Positions 1-16,300 of a stretch of DNA of 64,000 nt are shown piece by piece. This stretch comes from Macrostomum hystrix (taxonomy: Eukaryota; Animalia; Platyhelminthes). The translations under genes and the position numbers were made by a program. Position 1 is the stretch's first letter. The number at the start of each line of letters is the position of its first letter. The stretch lies in NCBI GenBank assembly GCA_950097015.1, contig CATNEN010000005.1:4836001-4900000 (forward strand), given 5' to 3'. The notes under the pieces were generated by a model, which saw nothing but the letters and a program-made list of their open reading frames with translations, had not been told where the DNA came from and made no database searches.

Positions 1-3000
1 CTCTTGCTGCGATTCTAGCTTTGCCTCTCTTGCTGCGATTCTAGCTTTGCCTCTCTTGCTGCGATTCTAGCTTTGTCTCTCTTGCTGCGATTCTAGCTTT
101 GTCTCTCTTGCTGCGATTCTAGCTTTGTCTCTCTTGCTGCGATTCTAGCTTTGCCTCTCTTGCTGCGATTCTAGCTTTGTCTCTCTTGCTGCGATTCTAG
201 CTTTGCCTCTCTTGCTTGGATTCTATCTTTGTCTCTTTTGCTGCGATTCTAGCTTTGCCTCTCTTGCTGAGATTCTAGCTTTGCCTCTCTTGCTGAGATT
301 CTAGCTTTGTCTCTCTTGCTGCGATTCTAGCTTTGCCTCTCTTGCTGCGATTCTAGCTTTGTCTCTCTTGCTGCGATTCTAGCTCTGCCTCTTATGCTGC
401 GATTCTAGCTTTGTCTCTCTTGCTGCGATTCTAGCTTTGCCTCTCTTGCTGCGATTCTAGCTTTGCCTCTCTTGCTGAGATTCTAGCTTTGTCTCTCTTG
501 CTGCGATTCTAGCTTTGTCTCTCTTGCTGCGATTCTAGCTTTGCCTCTTTTGCTGCGATTCTAGCTTTGTCTCTCTTGCTGCGATTCTAGCTTTGCCTCT
601 CTTGCTGCGATTCTAGCTTTGCCTCTCTTGCTGAGATTCTAGCTTTGCCTCTCTTGCTAAGATTCTAGCTTTGCCTCTCTTGCTGCAATTCTAGCTTTGC
701 TTCTCTTGCTGCGATTCTAGCTTTGCCTCTCTTGCTGCGATTCTAGCTTTGCCTCTCTTGCTGCGATTCTAGCTTTGCCTCTTATGCTGCGATTCTAGCT
801 TTGTCTCTCTTGCTGCGATTCTAGCTTTGCCTCTCTTGCTAAGTTTCTAGCTTTGCCTCTCTTGCTGAGATTCTAGCTTTGTCTCTCTTGCTGCGATTCT
901 AGCTTTGTCTCTCTTGCTGCGATTCTAGCTTTGTCTCTCTTGCTGCGATTCTAGCTTTGTCTCTCTTGCTGCGATTCTAGCTTTGCCTCTTTTGCTGCGA
1001 TTCTAGCTTTGTCTCTCTTGCTGCGATTCTAGCTTTGCCTCTCTTGCTGCGATTCTAGCTTTGCCTCTCTTGCTGAGATTCTAGCTTTGCCTCTCTTGCT
1101 AAGATTCCTAGCTTTGCCTCTCTTGCTGCAATTCTAGCTTTGCTTCTCTTGCTGCGATTCTAGCTTTGCCTCTCTTGCTGCGATTCTAGCTTTGCCTCTC
1201 TTGCTGCGATTCTAGCTTTGCCTCTTATGCTGCGATTCTAGCTTTGTCTCTCTTGCTGCGATTCTAGCTTTGCCTCTCTTGCTAAGTTTCTAGCTTTGCC
1301 TCTCTTGCTGAGATTCTAGCTTTGTCTCTCTTGCTGCGATTCTAGCTTTGTCTCTCTTGCTGCGATTCTAGCTTTGTCTCTCTTGCTGCGATTCTAGCTT
1401 TGCCTCTTTTGCTGCGATTCTAGCTTTGTCTCTCTTGCTGCGATTCTAGCTTTGCCTCTCTTGCTGCGATTCTAGCTTTGCCTCTCTTGCTGAGATTCTA
1501 GCTTTGCCTCTCTTGCTAAGATTCCAGCTTTGCCTCTCTTGCTGCGATTCTAGCTTTGCCTCTCTTGCTGCGATTCTAGCTTTGTCTCTCTTACTGCGAT
1601 TCTAGCTTTGCCTCTCTTGCTGCGATTCTAGCTTTGTCCCTCTTGCTGCGATTCTAGCTTTGCTTCTCTTGCTGCGATTCTAGCTTTGCCTCTCTTGCTG
1701 AGATTCTAGCTTTGTCTCTCTTGCTGCGATTCTAGCTTTGTCTCTCTTGCTGCGATACTAGCTATGTCTCTCTTGCTGCGATTCTAGCTTTGTCTCTTGC
1801 TGCGATTCTAGCTTTGCTTCTCTTGCTGCGATTCTAGCTTTGCCTCTCTTGCTGCGATTCTAGCTTTGCCTCTCTTGCTGCGATTCTAGCTTTGCCTCTC
1901 TTGCTGCGATTCAAGCTTTGTCTCTCTTGCTGCGATTCTAGCTTTGTCTCTCTTGCTGCGATTCTAGCTTTGTCTCTCTTGCTGCGATTCTAGCTTTGCC
2001 TCTTATGCTGCGATTCTAGCTTTGTCTCTCTTGCTGCGATTCTAGCTTTGCCTCTCTTGCTGCGATTCTAGCTTTGCCTCTCTTGCTGCGATTCTAGCTT
2101 TGCCTCTCTTGCTGCGATTCTAGCTTTGTCTCTCTTGCTGCGATTCTAGCTTTGTCTCTCTTGCTGCGATTCTAGCTTTGTCTCTCTTGCTGCGATTCTA
2201 GCTTTGCCTCTCTTGCTGCGATTCTAGCTTTGTCTCTCTTGCTGCGATTCTAGCTTTGCCTCTCTTGCTTGGATTCTATCTTTGTCTCTTTTGCTGCGAT
2301 TCTAGCTTTGCCTCTCTTGCTGAGATTCTAGCTTTGCCTCTCTTGCTGAGATTCTAGCTTTGTCTCTCTTGCTGCGATTCTAGCTTTGCCTCTCTTGCTG
2401 CGATTCTAGCTTTGCCTCTCTTGCTGCGATTCTAGCTTTGTCTCTCTTGCTGCGATTCTAGTTTTGTCCCTCTTGATGTGATTCTAGCTTTCTCTCTCTT
2501 GCTGCGATTCTAGCTTTGCCTCTCTTGCTGCGATTCTAGCTTTGTCTCTCTTGCTGCGATTCTAGCTTTGCCTCTCTTGCTGCGATTCTAGCTTTGTCCC
2601 TCTTGCTGCGATTCTAGTTTTGTCCCTTTTGATGTGATTCTAGCTTTCTCTCTCTTGCTGCGATTCTAGCTTTGCCTCTCTTGCTGCGATTCTAGCTTTG
2701 TCTCTCTTGCTGCGATTCTAGCTTTGCCTCTCTTGCTGCGATTCTAGCTTTGACCCTCTTGCTGAGATTCTAGCTTTGCCTCTCTTGCTTGGATTCTAGC
2801 TTTGCCTCTCTTGCTGCGATTCTAGCTTTGCTTCTCTTGCTGCGATTCTAGCTTTGCCTCTCTTGCTGCGATTCTAGCTTTGCCTCTCTTGCTGCGATTC
2901 TAGCTTTGCCTCTCTTGCTGCGATTCTAGCTTTGTCTCTCTTGCTGCGATTCTAGCTTTGTCTCTCTTGCTGCGATTCTAGCTTTGTCTCTCTTGCTGCG

Positions 3001-5490
3001 ATTCTAGCTTTGTCTCTCTTGCTGCGATTCTAGCTTTGCCTCTCTTGCTGCGATTCTAGCTTTGCCTCTCTTGCTGCGATTCAAGCTTTGTCTCTCTTGC
3101 TGCGATTCTAGCTTTGTCTCTCTTGCTGCGATTCTAGCTTTGTCTCTCTTGCTGCGATTCTAGCTCTGCCTCTTATGCTGCGATTCTAGCTTTGTCTCTC
3201 TTGCTGCGATTCTAGCTTTGCCTCTCTTGCTAAGTTTCTAGCTTTGCCTCTCTTGCTGAGATTCTAGCTTTGTCTCTCTTGCTGCGATTCTAGCTTTGTC
3301 TCTCTTGCTGCGATTCTAGCTTTGTCTCTCTTGCTGCGATTCTAGCTTTGTCTCTCTTGCTGCGATTCTAGCTTTGCCTCTTTTGCTGCGATTCTAGCTT
3401 TGTCTCTCTTGCTGCGATTCTAGCTTTGCCTCTCTTGCTGCGATTCTAGCTTTGCCTCTCTTGCTGAGATTCTAGCTTTGCCTCTCTTGCTAAGATTCCA
3501 GCTTTGCCTCTCTTGCTGCAATTCTAGCTTTGCTTCTCTTGCTGCGATTCTAGCTTTGCCTCTCTTGCTGCGATTCTAGCTTTGCCTCTCTTGCTGCGAT
3601 TCTAGCTTTGCCTCTTATGCTGCGATTCTAGCTTTGTCTCTCTTGCTGCGATTCTAGCTTTGCCTCTCTTGCTAAGTTTCTAGCTTTGCCTCTCTTGCTG
3701 AGATTCTAGCTTTGTCTCTCTTGCTGCGATTCTAGCTTTGTCTCTCTTGCTGCGATTCTAGCTTTGTCTCTCTTGCTGCGATTCTAGCTTTGTCTCTCTT
3801 GCTGCGATTCTAGCTTTGCCTCTTTTGCTGCGATTCTAGCTTTGTCTCTCTTGCTGCGATTCTAGCTTTGCCTCTCTTGATGCGATTCTAGCTTTGCCTC
3901 TCTTGCTGAGATTCTAGCTTTGCCTCTCTTGCTAAGATTCCAGCTTTGCCTCTCTTGCTGCAATTCTAGCTTTGCTTCTCTTGCTGCGATTCTAGCTTTG
4001 CCTCTCTTGCTGCGATTCTAGCTTTGCCTCTCTTGCTGCGATTCTAGCTTTGCCTCTTATGCTGCGATTCTAGCTTTGTCTCTCTTGCTGCGATTCTAGC
4101 TTTGCCTCTCTTGCTAAGTTTCTAGCTTTGCCTCTCTTGCTGAGATTCTAGCTTTGTCTCTCTTGCTGCGATTCTAGCTTTGTCTCTCTTGCTGCGATTC
4201 TAGCTTTGTCTCTCTTGCTGCGATTCTAGCTTTGCCTCTTTTGCTGCGATTCTAGCTTTGTCTCTCTTGCTGCGATTCTAGCTTTGCCTCTCTTGCTGCG
4301 ATTCTAGCTTTGCCTCTCTTGCTGAGATTCTAGCTTTGCCTCTCTTGCTAAGATTCCAGCTTTGCCTCTCTTGCTAAGTTTCTAGCTTTGCCTCTCTTGC
4401 TGCGATTCTAGCTTTGCCTCTTATGCTGCGATTCTAGCTTTGTCTCTCTTGCTGCGATTCTAGCTTTGCCTCTCTTGCTAAGTTTCTAGCTTTGCCTCTC
4501 TTGCTGAGATTCTAGCTTTGTCTCTCTTGCTGCGATTCTAGCTTTGTCTCTCTTGCTGCGATTCTAGCTTTGTCTCTCTTGCTGCGATTCTAGCTTTGTC
4601 TCTCTTGCTGCGATTCTAGCTTTGCCTCTTTTGCTGCGATTCTAGCTTTGTCTCTCTTGCTGCGATTCTAGCTTTGCCTCTCTTGCTGCGATTCTAGCTT
4701 TGCCTCTCTTGCTGAGATTCTAGCTTTGCCTCTCTTGCTAAGATTCCAGCTTTGCCTCTCTTGCTGCAATTCTAGCTTTGCTTCTCTTGCTGCGATTCTA
4801 GCTTTGCCTCTCTTGCTGCGATTCTAGCTTTGCCTCTCTTGCTGCGATTCTAGCTTTGCCTCTTATGCTGCGATTCTAGCTTTGTCTCTCTTGCTGCGAT
4901 TCTAGCTTTGCCTCTCTTGCTGAGATTCTAGCTTTGTCTCTCTTGCTGAGATTCTAGCTTTGTCCCTCTTGCTGCGATTCTAGCTTTGCCTCTTTTGCTG
5001 CGATTCTAGCTTTGCCTCTCTTGCTGCGATTCTAGCTTTGCCTCTTATGCTGAGATTCTAGCTTTGCCTCTCTTGCTGCGATTCTAGCTTTGCCTCTTTT
5101 GCTGCGATTCTAGCTTTGTCTCTCTTGCTGCGATTCTAGCTTTGCCTCTCTTGCTGCGATTCTAGCTTTGCCTCTCTTGCTGAGATTCCAGCTTTGCCTC
5201 TCTTGCTGCAATTCTAGCTTTGTCTCTCTTGCTGCGATTCTAGCTTTGTCTCTCTTGCTGCGATTCTAGCTTTGCCTCTCTTGCTGCGATTCTAGCTTTG
5301 CCTCTCTTGCTGCGATTCTAGCTTTGCCTCTCTTGCTGAGATTCTAGCTTTGCCTCTCTTGCTGCGATTCTAGCTTTGTCTCTCTTGCTGCGATTCTAGC
5401 TTTGTCTCTCTTGCTGAGATTCTAGCTTTGCTTCTCTTGCTAAGATTCCAGCTTTGCCTCTCTTGCTGCAATTCTAGCTTTGCTTCTCTT
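1..5490. repeat. 26-bp satellite array (unit CTCTTGCTGCGATTCTAGCTTTG[C/T]CT), truncated by the window start, with ~442-bp higher-order periodicity
   Basis: About 210 near-identical 26-mers. The variant TCTTATG recurs at 780/1223, 3171/3613/4055 and 4419/4861, spacings of 442-443 bp = 17 units. Confidence 0.97.
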
Positions 5491-5956
5491 GGTGCAATTT
5501 TTTTAATATTCAGGGATTGATGCAAACTTTTCAGCTCCGTACTAAAAGCCTTTTTGATAGACCCCCTGTGAGCTCAGTATTGGCCTTCTCTCTTGGCAAG
5601 GTTTTAAAATTCAGGTAACATTTTTGTTACCGTGTTGTGTTTCCTTTGAGTTAACCAGGATATGGGGAAAAACAACACAATAGCACGAAGATTTCTGCTG
5701 ACGTGTACCTCCCTGAGGCCGTTCCGCGGCAATTCCGCGATAATCCCAAGGCAATCCCAAGCATGTGAGCCATGCTGGTAGAATGTTGTAAAGCTTATTT
5801 TCAGGGCTTACAATGTACAAACTAGGAGTATAAAACTCTTAGAATATGCTAGTCCAAACCTAGTCAGTTCCAGACCTCCAAACCGCTAACAGGACACTCG
5901 ACTCATTCTACTCGTACAGGCAAGTAACAAACTGATTTGCCATTGTTAATGCACAA

Positions 5957-7185: not shown

Positions 7186-10100
7186 ATGGCTGATAATTCA
7201 TCTGATAATTCATCTGATAATTCATCTGATAATTCATCTGATAATTCATCTGATAATTCATCTGATAATCCAGCTGGTAATCCAGCTGATAATCCAGCTG
7301 ATAATCCAGCCGATAATCCAGCTGATAATCCAGCCGATAATCCAACAACGGATGAATCAATCATTTTCAGTAAAGCTGGAATCATCTTCACTAGCACTGA
7401 AGCTAATCAATGGCTTAGTAATTTATTCCAGCGCTGGGTGAAGGAGAACCAAGCGTCGGGAGGAACCGTTCTCATTGCGTCACCGTTCATCGATAATTAC
7501 GGAAAAGAATTTGTTACGGGGGCATCTAATGATACAAATATTAAGGTGACGATTTTCTTTCGACGTAAAGAAAGTAAGCATGCTTACTTCCATTTCAAGT
7601 TCATAGCTTTCCAACCTAATGATGAAGATAAGCCAGCCGAGTTTGTCTACATGTCAGCCAATCTGACACAATGGCACATCAACCCGGGATTTCATCAACA
7701 AGACTGGTGGCTCATGCGCAGGGAACCAAGGTCGAACTTTGAACAGGCGAATGCATTCATGACTGGTACGAAAGAGACTACTACTAGTATTATATTCAAA
7801 TTTTAGTTTGGACGCTAAAGCGGTACCAATGTACAAAACTGAGTGACTAAAAATCCTGTCAAAATCCGTCTGTCTTTGCAGAGCTAAGAAGACATCAAGT
7901 CGCGGAATATCGTAAGTGAATAATGTTTAAATATTGTACCAAAAGTTTGAGAACAAAAAAATAACAATGGGAACAATGAGCTAATAAAATATAATTAACT
8001 ACGAATATAATTAACAAAGTTATCAGTTAACCAAGAGCTATCGAAAAATCATACACATTGAGATTAGACACTGAGATTAGACACTGAGATTGGACACTGA
8101 GATTGGACACTGAGATTAGACACTGAGATTGGACACTGAGATTAGACACTGAGATTAGACACTGAGATTAGACACTGAGATTAGACACTGAGATTGGACA
8201 CTGAGATTGGACACTGAGATTGGACACTGAGATTGGACACTGAGATTAGACATTGAGATTAGACACTGAGATTAGACACTGAGATTGGACACTGAGATTG
8301 GACACTGAGATTAGACACTGAGATTGGACACTGAGATTAGACACTGAGATTAGACACTGAGATTAGACACTGAGATTAGACACTGAGATTGGACACTGAG
8401 ATTGGACACTGAGATTAGACACTGAGATTAGACACTGAGATTAGACACTGAGATTAGACACTGAGATTAGACACTGAGATTGGACACTGAGATTAGACAC
8501 TGAGATTAGACACTGAGATTAGACACTGAGATTAGACACTGAGATTGGACACTGAGATTGGACACTGAGATTAGACACTGAGATTGGACACTGAGATTGG
8601 ACACTGAGATTAGACATTGAGATTAGACACTGAGATTGGACACTGAGATTGGACACTGAGATTAGACATTGAGATTAGACACTGAGATTAGACACTGAGA
8701 TTGGACACTGAGATTGGACACTGAGATTAGACACTGAGATTGGACACTGAGATTAGACACTGAGATTAGACACTGAGATTAGACACTGAGATTAGACACT
8801 GAGATTGGACACTGAGATTGGACACTGAGATTAGACACTGAGATTGGACACTGAGATTAGACACTGAGATTGGACACTGAGATTAGACACTGAGATTGGA
8901 CACTGAGATTAGACACTGAGATTAGACACTGAGATTAGACACTGAGATTAGACACTGAGATTAGACACTGAGATTAGACACTGAGATTAGACACGGACTG
9001 TGATTAGACACGGACTGTGATTAGACACGGACTGTGATTGGACACGGACTGTGATTAGACACGGACTGTGATTAGACACGGACTGTGATTAGACACGGAC
9101 TGTGATTAGACACGGACTGTGATTAGACACGGACTGTGATTAGACACGGACAGTGAATAGACACGGACTGTGATTAGACACGGACTGTGATTAGACACGG
9201 ACTGTGATTAGACACGGACTGTGATTAGACACGGACTGTGATTAGACACGGACAGTGAATAGACACGGACTATGAATAGACACGGACTGTGAATAGACAC
9301 GGACTATGAATAGACACGGACTGTGATTAGACACGGACTGTGATTAGACACGGACTGTGATTAGACACGGACAGTGATTAGACACGGACTGTGATTAGAC
9401 ACGGACAGTGAATAGACACGGACTATGAATAGACACGGACTGTGAATAGACACGGACTATGAATAGACACGGACTGTGATTAGACACGGACAGTGAATAG
9501 ACACGGACTATGAATAGACACGGACTGTGAATAGACACGGACTATGAATAGACACGGACTGTGATTAGACACGGACTATGAATAGACACGGACTGTGATT
9601 AGACACGGACTGTGATTAGACACGGACTGTGATTAGACACGGACAGTGAATAGACACGGACTATGAATAGACACGGACTATGAATAGACACGGACTGTGA
9701 TTAGACACGGACTGTGATTAGACACGGACTGTGATTAGACACGGACAGTGAATAGACACGGACTATGAATAGACACGGACTGTGATTAGACACGGACTGT
9801 GAATAGACACGGACTGTGAATAGACACGGACTGTGAATAGACACGGACTGTGATTAGACACGGACTGTGAATAGACACGGACTGCGAATAGACACGTACC
9901 GTGAATAGACACGGACTGTGAATAGACACGGACTGCGAATAGACACGGACCGTGAATAGACACGGACTGTGAATGGACACGGACTGTGAATAGACACGGA
10001 CTGCGAATAGACACGGACTGTGAATAGACACGGACTGTGAATAGAACGGACTGCGAATAGACACGGACCGTGAATAGACACGGACTGTGAATAGACACGG

Positions 10101-11848
10101 ACTGTGAATAGACACGGACTGTGAATAGACACGGACTGTGAATAGACACGGACTGTGATTAGACACGGACTGTGAATAGACACGGACTGCGAATAGACAC
10201 GTACCGTGAATAGACACGGACTGTGAATAGACACGGACTGCGAATAGACACGGACCGTGAATAGACACGGACTGTGAATAGACACGGACTGTGAATAGAC
10301 ACGGACTGCGAATAGACACGGACTGTGAATAGACACGGACTGTGAATAGAACGGACTGCGAATAGACACGGACCGTGAATAGACACGGACTGTGATTAGA
10401 CACGGACTGTGAATAGACACGGACTGCGAATAGACACGTACCGTGAATAGACACGGACTGTGAATAGACACGGACTGCGAATAGACACGGACCGTGAATA
10501 GACACGGACTGTGAATAGACACGGACTGTGAATAGACACGGACTGCGAATAGACACGGACTGTGAATAGACACGGACTGTGAATAGACACGGACTGTGAA
10601 TAGACACGGACTGTGAATAGACACGGACTGTGAATAGACACGGACTGTGATTAAATATACTTTCATTGATGTTTTAATAGGCAATGCTGCCCGTCGTCAA
10701 CCGGCCAATGATGGTGAGTAAAAGGCAATTTATATTTGTCATTAAGGCTAACAAATATAATTCTGATCATCTATAGCTTTAGCTTTTGCTTTCTGCTATA
10801 TTAACTTCAAACAGAAGGATAGTTTTAAGCAAAATATTATTTTGTTTTATTGATGTGATTTCAAAACTAGAAATATTATATGAATTACGAAGGGTGAATA
10901 GATACTGGTACTCAAATGAAGTTTTGTACGCTTGAGCAAATAGAGATACCATGGGTTTTTATATAGCCATTTTCCCTATTTGTCAAGTTTTTATCGGAGA
11001 TGAATAAAAAGTTTCATTTATTTTCTGCGCAAAACGATTACATATTGGTATTTAGTCTGACCTTGAGAAGTTTCAATCCTTTGCACCCGCTTTTAGGAGT
11101 GGACGATCTCGCACTTGGATTCAGTGGTTTGGGATTACAACAGCAGCAACCACAGCCACCACAGCCACCACAGCAACCACAGCAACAGCAGCAACCACAG
11201 CCACAACCACAGCAACTACATCAGCAGCCAAATGTCGAGTTGGCCATATTCACGCATGTAGAGCTGCTTCAAAAGCTGACAAACAAGCTCGGGCAATGGA
11301 AAAACGGCGACGTGCTGATTGTGTCGCCATTCTTTCAGTGGAATAATCATAATGGCATAAAAACGGAACAGTGTAGCAACACAAATTATCTGAAAAAATT
11401 ATATGAAGATATGGGATCAGCGAACCCATTTAAGTCACTGACAGTCTGCACTCGCGAGAAGCCTGAATATGGAAAAAAACATATAGGCAAATGGTGCGAA
11501 TTTCATTGGCAGTTTCGCGTAGGAAATTCCTTTCACACGAAGCTCCTGGCTTGCCTTAAACCAGATAGACAAGCGGAGATTGTCTACACGTCCGCTAATT
11601 TCAACGAAGCTCACTATGATTTTCCTGGGAACGGAAACTCCCGGAATTATCTCCAGCACGACTCTTGGATTGAGATCGAGGCGAGCGAAGAAGAATTCTG
11701 TAATATTCGAGACCTCTTTGTCAAATCGCAAATCAGGCCGCACGGACTGTGCGATGATCATCATTATCCAAATCTGCAGCATGCTCCATATCAACAGCAG
11801 CATGCTCCATATCAGCAGCAGCAGTATTCAACGACTCAGCCTCAGTAA
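7186..11848 (+). CDS. Spliced gene for a protein with two PLD-superfamily (HKD-like nuclease/phosphodiesterase) half-domains, ~464 aa; exons 7186-7765, 7882-7911, 10681-10713, 11097-11848
   Basis: Domain 1: VLIASPFID...FHFKFIAF...AEFVYMSANLT. Domain 2: VLIVSPFFQ...FHTKLLAC...AEIVYTSANFN. Three phase-1 GT-AG introns (G|gtacga..tttgcag|AG, C|gtaagt..taatag|GC, G|gtgagt..ttttag|GA) join the two ORF-track ORFs in frame: ...NAFMT-E-LRRHQVAEY-R-NAARRQPAND-G-VDDLALGF.... An in-frame stop lies 5 codons upstream of the ATG at 7186. Confidence 0.8.
7192..7350 (+). repeat. Coding 12-bp tandem repeat giving (SSDN)n(PADN)n at the N-terminus of the PLD-like protein
   Basis: TCATCTGATAAT units followed by CCAGC[T/C]GATAAT units, in frame with the ORF. 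Confidence 0.9.
8060..8990. repeat. 13-bp minisatellite GAGATT[A/G]GACACT (intron 2 of the PLD-like gene)
   Basis: About 70 tandem copies. Confidence 0.95.
8985..10651. repeat. 17-bp minisatellite GA[T/A]TAGACACGGACTG[T/C], contiguous with and related to the 13-mer
   Basis: About 98 copies; shares the GATTAGACAC core with the 13-mer. Confidence 0.95.
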
Positions 11849-12667
11849 AATCGGTATCAATTGTCCTCCACCTGGCCACCAAGCAGGAAGAAGGCTTAAG
11901 TCTCAACTGCGGCACAGCAACAAAAGTACACGTGCTGAACAAAAACGATGACTCGAAAGTGATTAAATTCTTTATATGACCAGATATTTATATTCAGTCT
12001 TCCTTTATAGATTTTTTGTGTCAGTGACTTACCCATATAACCGTGCGTCATTTTTCGAAGTTAAAAACGAATGAGTTAAGTGTTGATTGACTATTGGAAT
12101 ATGAGTATGGTAGGTATAGTCACCATTTTAAGGAAGCTTGGACTTGGCTACTATTTTTACTGATTGATTTTTAGCACTAAATCTATGAGATAGACGATAC
12201 ATTCCTTATAAAAATGTAGCTTCTTTTTTATCTTCTTTTGGTTTTTGTAGCCTTTTTTAAAGTTTGCCTTTGTTTATTTTGTGTTTTATTTATACTCAAG
12301 ATATTGCTATTAGCCTTGTAGGGCTGTGTTTATTCACCACAATGCTTAGCACTATGTGACTAACCTGCTGTGCAAAAGTTAGTTGAATACTTGTCTTTTT
12401 CCGTTTATGTAGCCACTGATTAATCCATAGTCAACCTGTTTAGTTATTTCTTACTAGTTTTGCGAAACTATTTTTGATTCATTTTTCTGATAATTGATTT
12501 CATACCAAGTTAAAATCGGGTGATTGGTTATTCGTTTTTTATACATATACTATACTTACTGATTTTTTATATTTATATATTTCCTAACGCACCGATTTTA
12601 TCTAAAATACACCAGACCTCTTTAATGGCAAGAAAACTCTGCTCATTTTCTTATGTTTCACATAGCT

Positions 12668-13314: not shown

Positions 13315-16300
13315 TCAAGGCTGACAGACGGCTGCTCGCCTCTGAGTCAATCCGCAGCCGAATGCCTCGCCAAAGTCTGACAGACCTTGAACTGCCAGTT
13401 CGACTCTGGGAAATGGTGGATGGATAGTTGATGGATGGGTTCTGTCAGTTGATGGATGGGTTCTGTCAGTTGATGGATGGGTTCTGTCAGTTGATGGATG
13501 GGTTCTGTCAGTTGATGGATGGGTTCTGTCAGTTGATGGATGGGTTCTGTCAGTTGATGAATGGGTTCTGTCAGTTGATGGATGGGTTCTGTTAGTTGAT
13601 GGATGGGTTCTGTCAGTTGATGGATGGGTTCTGTCAGTTGATGGATGGGTTCTGTCAGTTGATGGATGGGTTCTGTCAGTTGATGGATGGGTTCTGTCAG
13701 TTGATGGATGGGTTCTGTCAGTTGATGAATGGGTTCTGTCAGTTGATGGATGGGTTCTGTTAGTTGATGGATGGGTTCTGTCAGTTGATGGATGGGTTCT
13801 GTCAGTTGATGGATGGGTTCTGTCAGTTGATGAATGGTTCTGTCAGTTGATGGATGGATTCTGACAGTTGATGGATGGGTTCTGTCAGTTGATGAATGGT
13901 TCTGTCAGTTGATGGATGGGTTCTGTCAGTTGATGGATGGGTTCTGTCAGTTGATGGATGGTTCTGTCAGTTGATGGATGGGTTCTGTCAGTTGATGGAT
14001 GGTTCTGTCAGTTGATGGATGGTTCTGTCAGTTGATGGATGGGTTCTGTCAGTTGATGGATGGGTTCTGTCAGTTGATGGATGGGTTTTGTCAGTTGATG
14101 GATGGGTTCTGACAGTTGATGAATGGTTCTGTCAGTTGATGGATGGGTTCTTACAGTTGATGGATGGGTTCTGTCAGTTGATGGATGGTTCTGTCAGTTG
14201 ATGGATGGGTTCTGTCAGTTGATGGATGGTTCTGTCAGTTGATGGATAGTTCTGACAGTTGATGGATGGGTTCTGTCAGTTGATGAATGGTTCTGTCAGT
14301 TGATGGATGGGTTCTGTCAGTTGATGGATGGTTCTGTCAGTTGATGGATGGGTTCTGTCAGTTGATGAATGGGTTCTGTCAGTTGATGGATGGGTTCTGT
14401 CAGTTGATGGATGGGTTCTGTCAGTTGATGGATGGGTTTTGTCAGTTGATGGATGGGTTCTGTCAGTTGATGAATGGTTCTGTCAGTTGATGGATGGGTT
14501 CTTACAGTTGATGGATGGGTTCTGTCAGTTGATGGATGGTTCTGTCAGTTGATGGATGGGTTCTGTCAGTTGATGGATGGTTCTGTCAGTTGATGGATGG
14601 TTCTGACAGTTGATGGATGGGTTCTGTCAGTTGATGAATGGTTCTGTCAGTTGATGGATGGGTTCTGTCAGTTGATGGATGGGTTCTGTTAGTTGATGGA
14701 TGGGTTCTGTGAGTTGATGGATGGGTTCTGTCAGTTGATGGATGGGTTCTGACAGTTGATGAATGGTTCTGTCAGTTGATGGATGGGTTCTGTTAGTTGA
14801 TGGATGGGTTCTGACAGTTGATGAATGGTTCTGTCAGTTGATGGATGGGTTCTGTTAGTTGATGGATGGGTTCTGTCAGTTGATGGATGGGTTCTGTCAG
14901 TTGATGGATGGTTCTGTCAGTTGATGAATGGGTTCTGTCAGTTGATGGATGGGTTCTGTCAGTTGATGTAAGGGCTCTGTCAGTTGATGGATGGTTCTGT
15001 CAGTTGATTGATGGGTTCTGTCAGTTGATGAATGGGTTCTGTCAGTTGATGTAAGGGTTCTGTCAGTTGATGGATGAGTTCTGTCAGTTGATGAATGGTT
15101 CTGTCAGTTGATGGATGGTTCTGTCAGTTGATGGATGGTTCTGACAGTTGATGGATGGGTTCTGTCAGTTGATGGATGGGTTGTGTCAGTTGATGACTGG
15201 TTCTGTCACTTGATGGATGGTTCTGTCAGTTGATTGATGGTTCTGTCAGTTGATTGATGGGTTCTGTCAGTTATTAGATGATTATTCCTACCTGGATTTA
15301 AGCGGAACATAGGATCTTTGAAGTCTGGCCCTCAGTTCTGGTCTCTCAGTGCCACAGTGACTCTGTAAAATAATGCATGAAATTTTAAGAAAATCCTGAT
15401 TTTAGGAAAAACAAGTTTATAAATGGTGGCTTTACCTGAGCGAATGCCATGAAGACCAGCTGATGAGGCGCATAGCTGACTGTTGGAAGGCCGAGTGGCA
15501 TGTCGGAGCGTCTAGTGAGGTGCGTCCGGTGTGCCAGGTTTGCCACCCTCAGACCCCACGCAAAGGCGAAGGCTTCACGAATAGCCGACTTTGATGTGGA
15601 CTAAATGGTTTTTTGGGAGTTCTCGGATGCTGAACTCCTGCTGCGATTCTAGCTTTGCCTCTCTTGCTGCGATTCTAGCTTTGCCTCTCTTGCTGCGATT
15701 CTAGCTTTGTCTCTCTTGCTGCGATTCTAGCTTTGCCTCTCTTGCTGCGATTCTAGCTTTGCCTCTCTTGCTGCGATTCTAGCTTTGCCTCTCTTGCTGC
15801 GATTCTAGCTTTGCCTCTCTTGCTGCGATTCTAGCTTTGCCTCTCTTGCTGCGATTCTAGCTTTGCCTCTCTTGCTGCGATTCTAGCTTTGCCTCTCTTG
15901 CTGCGATTCTAGCTTTGTCTCTCTTGCTGCGATTCTAGCTTTGCCTCTCTTGCTGCGATTCTAGCTTTGCCTCTTATGCTGCGATTCTAGCTTTGCCTGT
16001 CTTGCTGCGATTCTAGCTTTGCCTCTCTTGCTGCGATTCTAGCTTTGCCTCTCTTGCTGCGATTCTAGCTTTGCTTCTCTTGCTGCGATTCTAGCTTTGC
16101 CTCTCTTGCTGCGATTCTAGCTTTGCCTCTCTTGCTGCGATTCTAGCTTTGCCTCTCTTGCTGCGATTCTAGCTTTGCCTCTCTAGACATAACCTAAGAC
16201 CGAATCCCATGCCAAAACAAAAATGTAAACAAAATGCTGGACCTGCTACTTACATGGCCAGTAGGCAGTAGTGATGCCATGCAGTCCTCTGTATCGGCGC

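What the first reader, a model, noticed from the sequence alone, without database searches (positions are those of the whole stretch)
7186..11848. Unassigned two-domain PLD-superfamily (HxK...SAN) nuclease-like gene hidden as two separate ORFs
Seen: two ORFs 3.3 kb apart each carry xLIxSPF, FHxK(F/L)(I/L)A and AE(F/I)VY(M/T)SAN(L/F) motifs, an internal duplication, and two microexons join them in frame into one ~464-aa protein with a polyQ/P linker. Established: PLD-fold enzymes build one active site from two HxK motifs, either as homodimers (bacterial Nuc, BfiI, DISARM DrmC, Zucchini/PLD6) or as tandem domains (TDP1, PLD3/4, DNase II). TDP1-type motifs lack the HKD aspartate and end in SxN/SAN, as here. 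Inference: both His/Lys pairs are intact, so it is probably an active nuclease or phosphodiesterase. The minimal IxSPF-type domains, with no PX/PH, TM or TDP1 insertions, look more like microbial PLD nucleases than standard animal paralogues. It may be a lineage-specific or horizontally acquired DNA-repair, small-RNA or defence nuclease.
Basis: partly seen in the sequence, partly recalled or inferred. Interest (0 to 1): 0.8.

Follow-up and report, generated by a model that had tools for sequence, protein, structure and literature searches.

The report
Orphan two-domain PLD-fold phosphodiesterase gene
The two ORFs are really one spliced, expressed flatworm-type gene whose protein carries two small PLD-fold (HxK...SAN) domains, an almost relative-less family that probably cuts phosphodiester bonds in nucleic acids, although no activity has been tested.

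Summary
ORFs 7186-7806 and 11000-11848 (+) are internal repeats: BLASTP E 2e-5, and the local score beat all 2000 shuffles. Both carry VLIxSPF, FHxK and SAN.

RNA-derived contigs from four runs of one study show the GT..AG joint 10713>11097. They continue upstream of 10681 with the exact 30 letters of microexon 7882-7911. Contig length and a k-mer break at 7315 fit the 7765>7882 joint. So this is one four-exon gene of 1395 nt (464 codons).

No Pfam, NCBIfam, PADLOC, PHROGs or PDB sequence match exists. An exhaustive profile search of 1.84 billion proteins found only three relatives: one Macrostomum lignano protein and two unnamed two-domain proteins.

The motifs are HKN-type, with no Asp at K+5 and K-to-N spacing of 19 and 21. 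The gene is neither a TDP1 orthologue nor a member of any named family.

Not shown: that the two motifs form one pocket, the substrate, and horizontal transfer.

The parts
7186..7765 (+). Exon 1 (580 nt, ends in phase 1): start codon, N-terminal DNSS/DNPA low-complexity repeat, PLD-like domain 1
   Evidence: ORF; GT donor at 7766. RNA contigs carry 451 further letters upstream of microexon 1, which puts their start at 7315, the first unique 31-mer. The part 7186-7314 and the start codon are not confirmed by RNA here.
7189..7344 (+). 12-nt coding tandem repeat (13 copies) that encodes the DNSS/DNPA repeats
   Evidence: TRF; translation
7351..7764 (+). PLD-like domain 1 (138 aa): VLIASPF 7468-7488, H-F-K 7591-7599, S-A-N 7654-7662
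   Evidence: Alignments A1 and A2. All 7 family-invariant residues are present. Atlas feature neighbours are RE_NgoFVII and PLDc_2 clusters. K-to-N spacing is 21, with Gln at K+5.
7766..7881 (+). Intron 1 (116 nt, GT..AG)
7882..7911 (+). Microexon 1 (30 nt; encodes about ELRRHQVAEY)
   Evidence: Its exact 30 letters are the loose end directly upstream of 10681 in contigs of all four runs
7912..10680 (+). Intron 2 (2769 nt), almost filled by a 13-nt minisatellite (8055-8994) and a 17-nt minisatellite (8980-10650)
   Evidence: TRF; spliced out in RNA contigs
10681..10713 (+). Microexon 2 (33 nt; encodes about RNAARRQPAND)
   Evidence: Contig pieces 10681-10712 joined to 11096-11125 in 4 of 4 runs
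10714..11096 (+). Intron 3 (383 nt, GT..AG). It contains the ATG at 11000 that made ORF 2 look like a separate gene.
   Evidence: Joint 'skips 383, GT..AG' at depth 94-171, against unspliced contigs at depth 7-10
11097..11848 (+). Exon 4 (752 nt including the stop codon): poly-Q/P linker, PLD-like domain 2, Q-rich HAPYQQQ tail
11138..11224 (+). Poly-Q/P linker between the two domains
   Evidence: Translation; TRF rows 11144-11220
11225..11725 (+). PLD-like domain 2 (167 aa): VLIVSPF 11312-11332, H-T-K 11534-11542, S-A-N 11591-11599
   Evidence: AlphaFold model with pLDDT 77 and pTM 0.78. Only PLD-fold matches appear at the top of the lists. K-to-N spacing is 19, with Leu at K+5.
11849..12100 (+). 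3' UTR, at least this far
   Evidence: RNA contigs cover 11096-12100 and carry 276-541 more letters beyond the laid stretch

Best explanation
This is one four-exon, expressed gene of a Macrostomum-like flatworm genome. It encodes a 464-codon soluble protein with no signal peptide or membrane segment. The protein has two small PLD-fold domains (138 and 167 aa) joined by two microexon-encoded basic stretches and a poly-Q/P linker. Each domain keeps an HKN-type motif: HxK at the start of a strand, a hairpin, then SAN. Inferred: the two domains pack as an intramolecular pseudo-dimer, as in TDP1 and PLD3/PLD4, so that the two His-Lys-Asn sets form one active site. One His attacks a phosphodiester to give a phospho-histidine intermediate, and the other acts as general acid/base. 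The substrate is most likely nucleic acid, by nuclease or DNA/RNA-end phosphodiesterase activity. Shown: gene structure, expression, the internal duplication, the fold of domain 2, motif conservation and the rarity of the family. Inferred: the single pocket, catalysis and the substrate.
Confidence: 0.6

Rival explanations
1. It is the lineage's highly diverged orthologue of TDP1, and so a 3'-phosphotyrosyl / 3'-end DNA repair enzyme.
For: It has two HKN-type motifs in one chain, no HKD Asp, and K-to-N spacing of 19 and 21 against 18 and 21 in human TDP1 (PMC5778467). The M. lignano relative P0001 is named 'Tyrosyl-DNA phosphodiesterase' by its source. Some Atlas neighbour clusters carry PF06087.
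Confidence: 0.12
2. It is a catalytically dead PLD-fold scaffold, like FAM83, MITD1 or the TrmB sugar domain, that binds a ligand or partner rather than cleaving anything.
Against: His, Lys and Asn (Thr in one domain) are kept in both domains of the window protein. H and K are invariant in all 7 domains of the family despite 16-35% identity. That pattern is expected for catalysis and not for a scaffold.
Confidence: 0.15
3. It is an anciently captured bacterial or phage Nuc/NgoFVII-type PLD nuclease that later gained introns and duplicated in tandem.
For: The nearest language-model and shape neighbours are bacterial and phage clusters of 144-242 aa carrying RE_NgoFVII or PLDc_2. The best solved matches are bacterial NucT and NgoAVII. 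Earlier notes of this scan report bacterial-type nucleases in this genome (s1-300448, s1-388045; not tested here).
Against: No prokaryotic or viral protein reached E 0.001 in the exhaustive profile search or in the word searches. The motif is HKN, not the HKD of Nuc/NucT. The gene has spliceosomal introns and typical host low-complexity regions. Similarity of fold says nothing about the route of descent.
Confidence: 0.1
4. They are two separate single-domain genes, each starting at its own ATG, whose products act as homo- or heterodimers.
For: Each ORF begins with ATG. The M. lignano relative P0001 has only one domain as annotated. Low-depth unspliced contigs cover 10794-11125.
Against: Spliced contigs joining microexon 1, microexon 2 and exon 4 are about 15-20 times deeper than the unspliced ones in all four runs. 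Contig length fits the link to exon 1. The joined frame is open throughout. Relatives P0002 and P0003 have two domains on single contigs.
Confidence: 0.03

Closest known systems
TDP1 (tyrosyl-DNA phosphodiesterase 1; Pfam PF06087)
   Same: One chain holds two PLD-fold domains. The motifs are HKN-type without the HKD aspartate, with TSAN-like ends and similar K-to-N spacing (19 and 21 here; 18 and 21 in human TDP1, PMC5778467).
Minimal HKD nucleases: Nuc, NucT, Zucchini/PLD6, and the N-terminal domains of BfiI, NgoAVII and NgoFVII
   Different: Those proteins have a single domain and form the site by homodimerising, whereas here two diverged copies are fused in one chain. This protein has no Asp at K+5 (Gln and Leu instead). 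No sequence-level similarity was detected.
PLD3 / PLD4 endolysosomal exonucleases
   Same: They are animal proteins with an intra-chain pseudo-dimer of two PLD domains acting on nucleic acids (PMC10690185).
FAM83 DUF1669, MITD1 and TrmB PLD-like non-enzymes
   Different: Those proteins lack the catalytic His. Here His and Lys are invariant in all domains of the family.

Membership tests
PLD superfamily (fold level) | PLD alpha/beta fold of the domain | tested here: met
PLD superfamily (fold level) | HxK at the start of a strand, followed by a hairpin and a (G/T)SxN-type Asn | tested here: met
   The sequences are FHFK...MSAN and FHTK...TSAN. In the model HxK opens strand 106-111 and SAN follows strand 117-122. 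H and K are invariant in 7 domains. Superposition of these residues on catalytic residues of solved enzymes was not inspected.
PLD superfamily (fold level) | Two motifs brought together into one active site | tested here: inconclusive
Two motifs lie in one mRNA. The only two-domain model (relative P0002) had pLDDT 59 and pTM 0.44, and its TM to tandem PLD proteins was 0.2-0.25.
Pfam PLD-clan families (PLDc, PLDc_2, RE_NgoFVII, Tyr-DNA_phospho) | Score above the family's gathering threshold | tested here: not met
   No PLD-clan family appears even at E 10 for either ORF or for P0001-P0003.
TDP1 | HKN motifs instead of HKD, two per chain | tested here: met
   (no Asp at K+5; Asn at K+19 and K+21); PMC5778467.
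TDP1 | Sequence homology to TDP1 (PF06087 or solved TDP1 chains) | tested here: not met
TDP1 | 3'-phosphotyrosyl-DNA hydrolysis | not testable with these tools
   Needs a biochemical assay.
HKD nucleases (Nuc, Zucchini, BfiI, NgoFVII) | HxK(x)4D(x)6G(S/T)xN signature | tested here: not met
   The residue at K+5 is Gln (domain 1) or Leu (domain 2), and K-to-N spacing is 21 and 19 instead of 15. The signature itself is quoted from established knowledge and from PMC10690185.
HKD nucleases (Nuc, Zucchini, BfiI, NgoFVII) | One PLD domain per chain, with the active site formed by a homodimer | tested here: not met
   The window gene fuses two diverged domains. Only the M. lignano relative P0001 is single-domain as annotated.
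PLD-like pseudoenzymes (FAM83, MITD1) | Loss of the catalytic His | tested here: not met
   His and Lys are present in both domains and invariant across the family.

The most novel reading that the evidence does not exclude
This is a fast-evolving nucleic-acid phosphodiesterase restricted to flatworms (or a few lineages). It would have been built by tandem fusion of a minimal Nuc/NgoFVII-size PLD domain that independently arrived at TDP1-like HKN chemistry. It could be of ancient microbial origin and serve genome defence, germline small-RNA processing or a lineage-specific DNA-repair task, and so would be a new functional class of animal PLD nuclease.
Probability: 0.15. Interest if true: 0.7.

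Novelty: new variant of a known kind. Interest (0 to 1): 0.5.

Why it matters
PLD-fold nucleases in animals are few, and each turned out to be biologically important: TDP1 in topoisomerase repair, Zucchini in piRNA biogenesis, and PLD3/4 in the control of innate nucleic-acid sensing. This gene is expressed and correctly spliced, and it has two intact catalytic motifs. No family model recognises it, and it has only three relatives among 1.84 billion proteins. It is therefore a cheap, well-defined candidate for a new enzyme activity in a regenerating flatworm model group. It also shows how genes split by minisatellite-filled introns and microexons are missed: the closest public relative may itself be a truncated model carrying a doubtful automatic name.

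Tried and rejected
- Family scans (Pfam, NCBIfam, PADLOC, PHROGs) of both domains and of the relatives gave nothing relevant.
- PDB sequence searches with ORF 2 and with profiles A1 and A2 gave only chance hits.
- Word-index protein searches with ORF 2 and with alignment A2 gave nothing.
- tblastn of both domains against the window found no further paralogue in the 64 kb.
- The full-length fold of relative P0002 was too poor to read the inter-domain geometry.
- The domain tree puts window domain 1 with domain 2 plus P0001 (support 87/95) and apart from the N-domains of P0002 and P0003. All branches are saturated. Domain 1 also lacks the same insertion that those N-domains lack. So I do not decide whether the duplication is ancestral or independent.
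- The source organism of P0002 and P0003 (Logan runs SRR25569778, SRR25569782, SRR25569786) could not be identified from papers.
- The P0001 locus is not on record, so I could not look for a missed upstream domain in M. lignano.
- A short ENA 'member' of the P0002 cluster lies on a contig (L003) that tblastn does not match to P0002. I disregarded it.
- I laid reads only on 10655-12100, because the tool turns away stretches with long repeats and intron 2 is 2.6 kb of minisatellite.
- The reading 'two separate genes' is rejected.

Full report
**1. The observation**

The window is eukaryotic DNA rich in minisatellites. ORFs 7186-7806 (206 aa) and 11000-11848 (282 aa) on the + strand exist as described. 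Their products align at 28% identity over 151 columns (BLASTP E 2e-5). They share these motifs:
- IFT..E..Q.L.N..W
- VLIxSPF
- NYxK
- FHxK..A
- AExVYxSAN
- H..PG
- QxDxW

A local-alignment score of 79 compares with 29.9 +/- 5.3 for 2000 shuffles, and none reached it.

**2. One gene, not two**

All have GT..AG borders and sum to 1395 nt, in frame.

Four public runs of one study hold the locus as Logan contigs. Their kind is not on record, but the contigs are spliced, so they derive from RNA.
- In all four runs a contig skips 10713>11097 (383 nt, GT..AG) at depth 94-171. Unspliced contigs across that intron have depth 7-10.
- The same contigs continue upstream of 10681 with AGCTAAGAAGACATCAAGTCGCGGAATATC. 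This is letter for letter microexon 7882-7911. Intron 2 (2769 nt, filled by a 13-nt and a 17-nt minisatellite) is therefore removed as predicted.

I could not lay the first intron, because the tool turns away long repeats and allowed only one call. Each contig does carry 481 letters upstream of microexon 2. With a 7765>7882 splice that places its start at 7315. Position 7315 is exactly the first place where 31-mers of exon 1 stop being repeated by the 12-nt coding array, which is where a de Bruijn contig must break. With intron 1 retained the start would be 7431, where nothing predicts a break.

The ATG at 11000 is intronic. The first 129 nt of exon 1 and the start codon are not confirmed by RNA here.

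**3. What the protein is**

Neither exon product has a hydrophobic stretch (maximum Kyte-Doolittle 0.65 over 19 residues), so there is no signal peptide or membrane anchor.

Sequence methods find no family:
- Pfam, NCBIfam, PADLOC and PHROGs gave nothing.
- PDB sequence and profile searches gave nothing.
- Word-index searches gave nothing.

An exhaustive HMMER search with the profile of the two domains covered 1.84 billion representatives and found three proteins at E <= 0.001:
- P0001 is from Macrostomum lignano (298 aa). It has one domain, 32% identical to domain 2 (E 1e-19). Its source names it 'Tyrosyl-DNA phosphodiesterase' automatically.
- P0002 (463 aa) and P0003 (369 aa) come from unnamed Logan assemblies. 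Each has two domains on one contig.

None of the three has a Pfam hit. Across the seven domains the F of SPF, H, K, A, S, A and a His five residues after the Asn are invariant. The Asn itself is Thr in one N-domain.

**4. Fold**

AlphaFold2 on domain 2 with that 7-row alignment gave pLDDT 77 and pTM 0.78. HxK opens strand 106-111 and SAN follows strand 117-122, which is the PLD hairpin.

- Foldseek against the PDB returned only PLD-superfamily chains in its top 50: the PPK1 C-domain, FAM83, NucT, NgoAVII, Zucchini, PLD3/4, Nuc and TDP1. E-values ran from 2e-4 upwards, with TM about 0.5.
- A search of all 48,161 representative chains that does not lean on Foldseek put PLD-fold chains at ranks 1-26: NucT 8.1, FAM83B 8.0, NgoAVII 7.7, SauUSI 7.4, F13 7.2, Nuc 7.0, BfiI 7.0, Zucchini 6.9, yeast TDP1 5.8 and human TDP1 4.4.

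Independent support comes from language-model neighbours. For each domain, searched separately, these are clusters carrying RE_NgoFVII, PLDc_2 or Tyr-DNA_phospho, scoring 0.92-0.94. Shape neighbours in the ESM Atlas are phage and bacterial PLDc_2 clusters with TM 0.53-0.58.

**5. Which kind of PLD protein**

The motifs are HKN-type. There is no Asp at K+5 (Gln and Leu instead), and Asn lies at K+21 and K+19. This resembles TDP1, with H263/K265/N283 and H493/K495/N516 (PMC5778467), more than the HxK(x)4D(x)6GSxN of Nuc-type enzymes. The domain size and the structural ranking, however, resemble the minimal Nuc/NgoFVII-type domains.

TDP1 membership fails on sequence and ranks low on structure. 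I therefore file the protein as an unassigned family of the PLD superfamily. It is neither a TDP1 orthologue nor an HKD nuclease.

**6. Mechanism (inferred)**

In TDP1 two HKN motifs of one chain form one site. One His is the nucleophile and the other the general acid/base, acting through a covalent phospho-His intermediate (PMC5778467). PLD3/4 likewise form an intra-chain dimer (PMC10690185). The window protein keeps both sets intact, so the same arrangement is the most likely one, with nucleic acid as substrate.

I could not show the pocket. The stand-in, full-length P0002, gave a poor model (pLDDT 59, pTM 0.44). It hits tandem PLD proteins (PPK1, TDP1, PLD3, PSS) at E 3e-10 to 1e-5, but with TM only 0.2-0.25.

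**7. Origin**

The genome is probably a Macrostomum-type flatworm. This is a lead from earlier notes of this scan and fits the best hit being from M. lignano.

No prokaryotic or viral sequence relative was found, so horizontal transfer has no sequence support. Fold-level likeness to microbial nucleases cannot decide descent.

A domain tree groups domain 1 with domain 2 plus P0001 (87/95), apart from the N-domains of P0002 and P0003 (100/99). That would suggest an independent duplication. All branches are saturated, though, and domain 1 lacks the same insertion that those N-domains lack. The question stays open. P0001 may be a truncated gene model.

**8. Verdict**

Activity, substrate and the single pocket remain inference. 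The gene is a new, nearly relative-less family within a well-known superfamily, and is of moderate interest.

Noticed in passing
window 1-5499 and 15635-16184: The same 26-nt minisatellite unit (CTCTTGCTGCGATTCTAGCTTTGCCT) forms a 5.5-kb array upstream of the gene and a 550-nt array about 3.8 kb downstream of it. The gene therefore sits in an island between two blocks of one repeat family.
   Followed up: no
window 7912-10680: Intron 2 of the gene is almost wholly two abutting private minisatellites (13-nt unit at 8055-8994, 17-nt unit at 8980-10650).
   Followed up: partly
window 7189-7344: A 12-nt tandem repeat lies inside the coding sequence and encodes the DNSS/DNPA repeats at the N-terminus. 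It is also the place where the RNA contigs break.
   Followed up: partly
P0001 (UniRef100_A0A1I8G658, Macrostomum lignano): The source names this protein 'Tyrosyl-DNA phosphodiesterase', yet it has no Pfam hit at E 10 and only one PLD-like domain. The name looks automatic, and the gene model may lack an upstream domain exon.
   Followed up: partly
L003 (ENA ERZ2916313 contig, 2148 nt): Short ENA proteins (40-56 aa) are listed as members of the 90% cluster of P0002. The one contig I fetched shows no tblastn match to P0002, so this is probably a clustering artefact.
   Followed up: partly
window 10794-11125: Low-depth contigs (7-10, against 125-170 for the spliced form) retain intron 3 in all four runs. 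This indicates a minor unspliced or pre-mRNA fraction.
   Followed up: no
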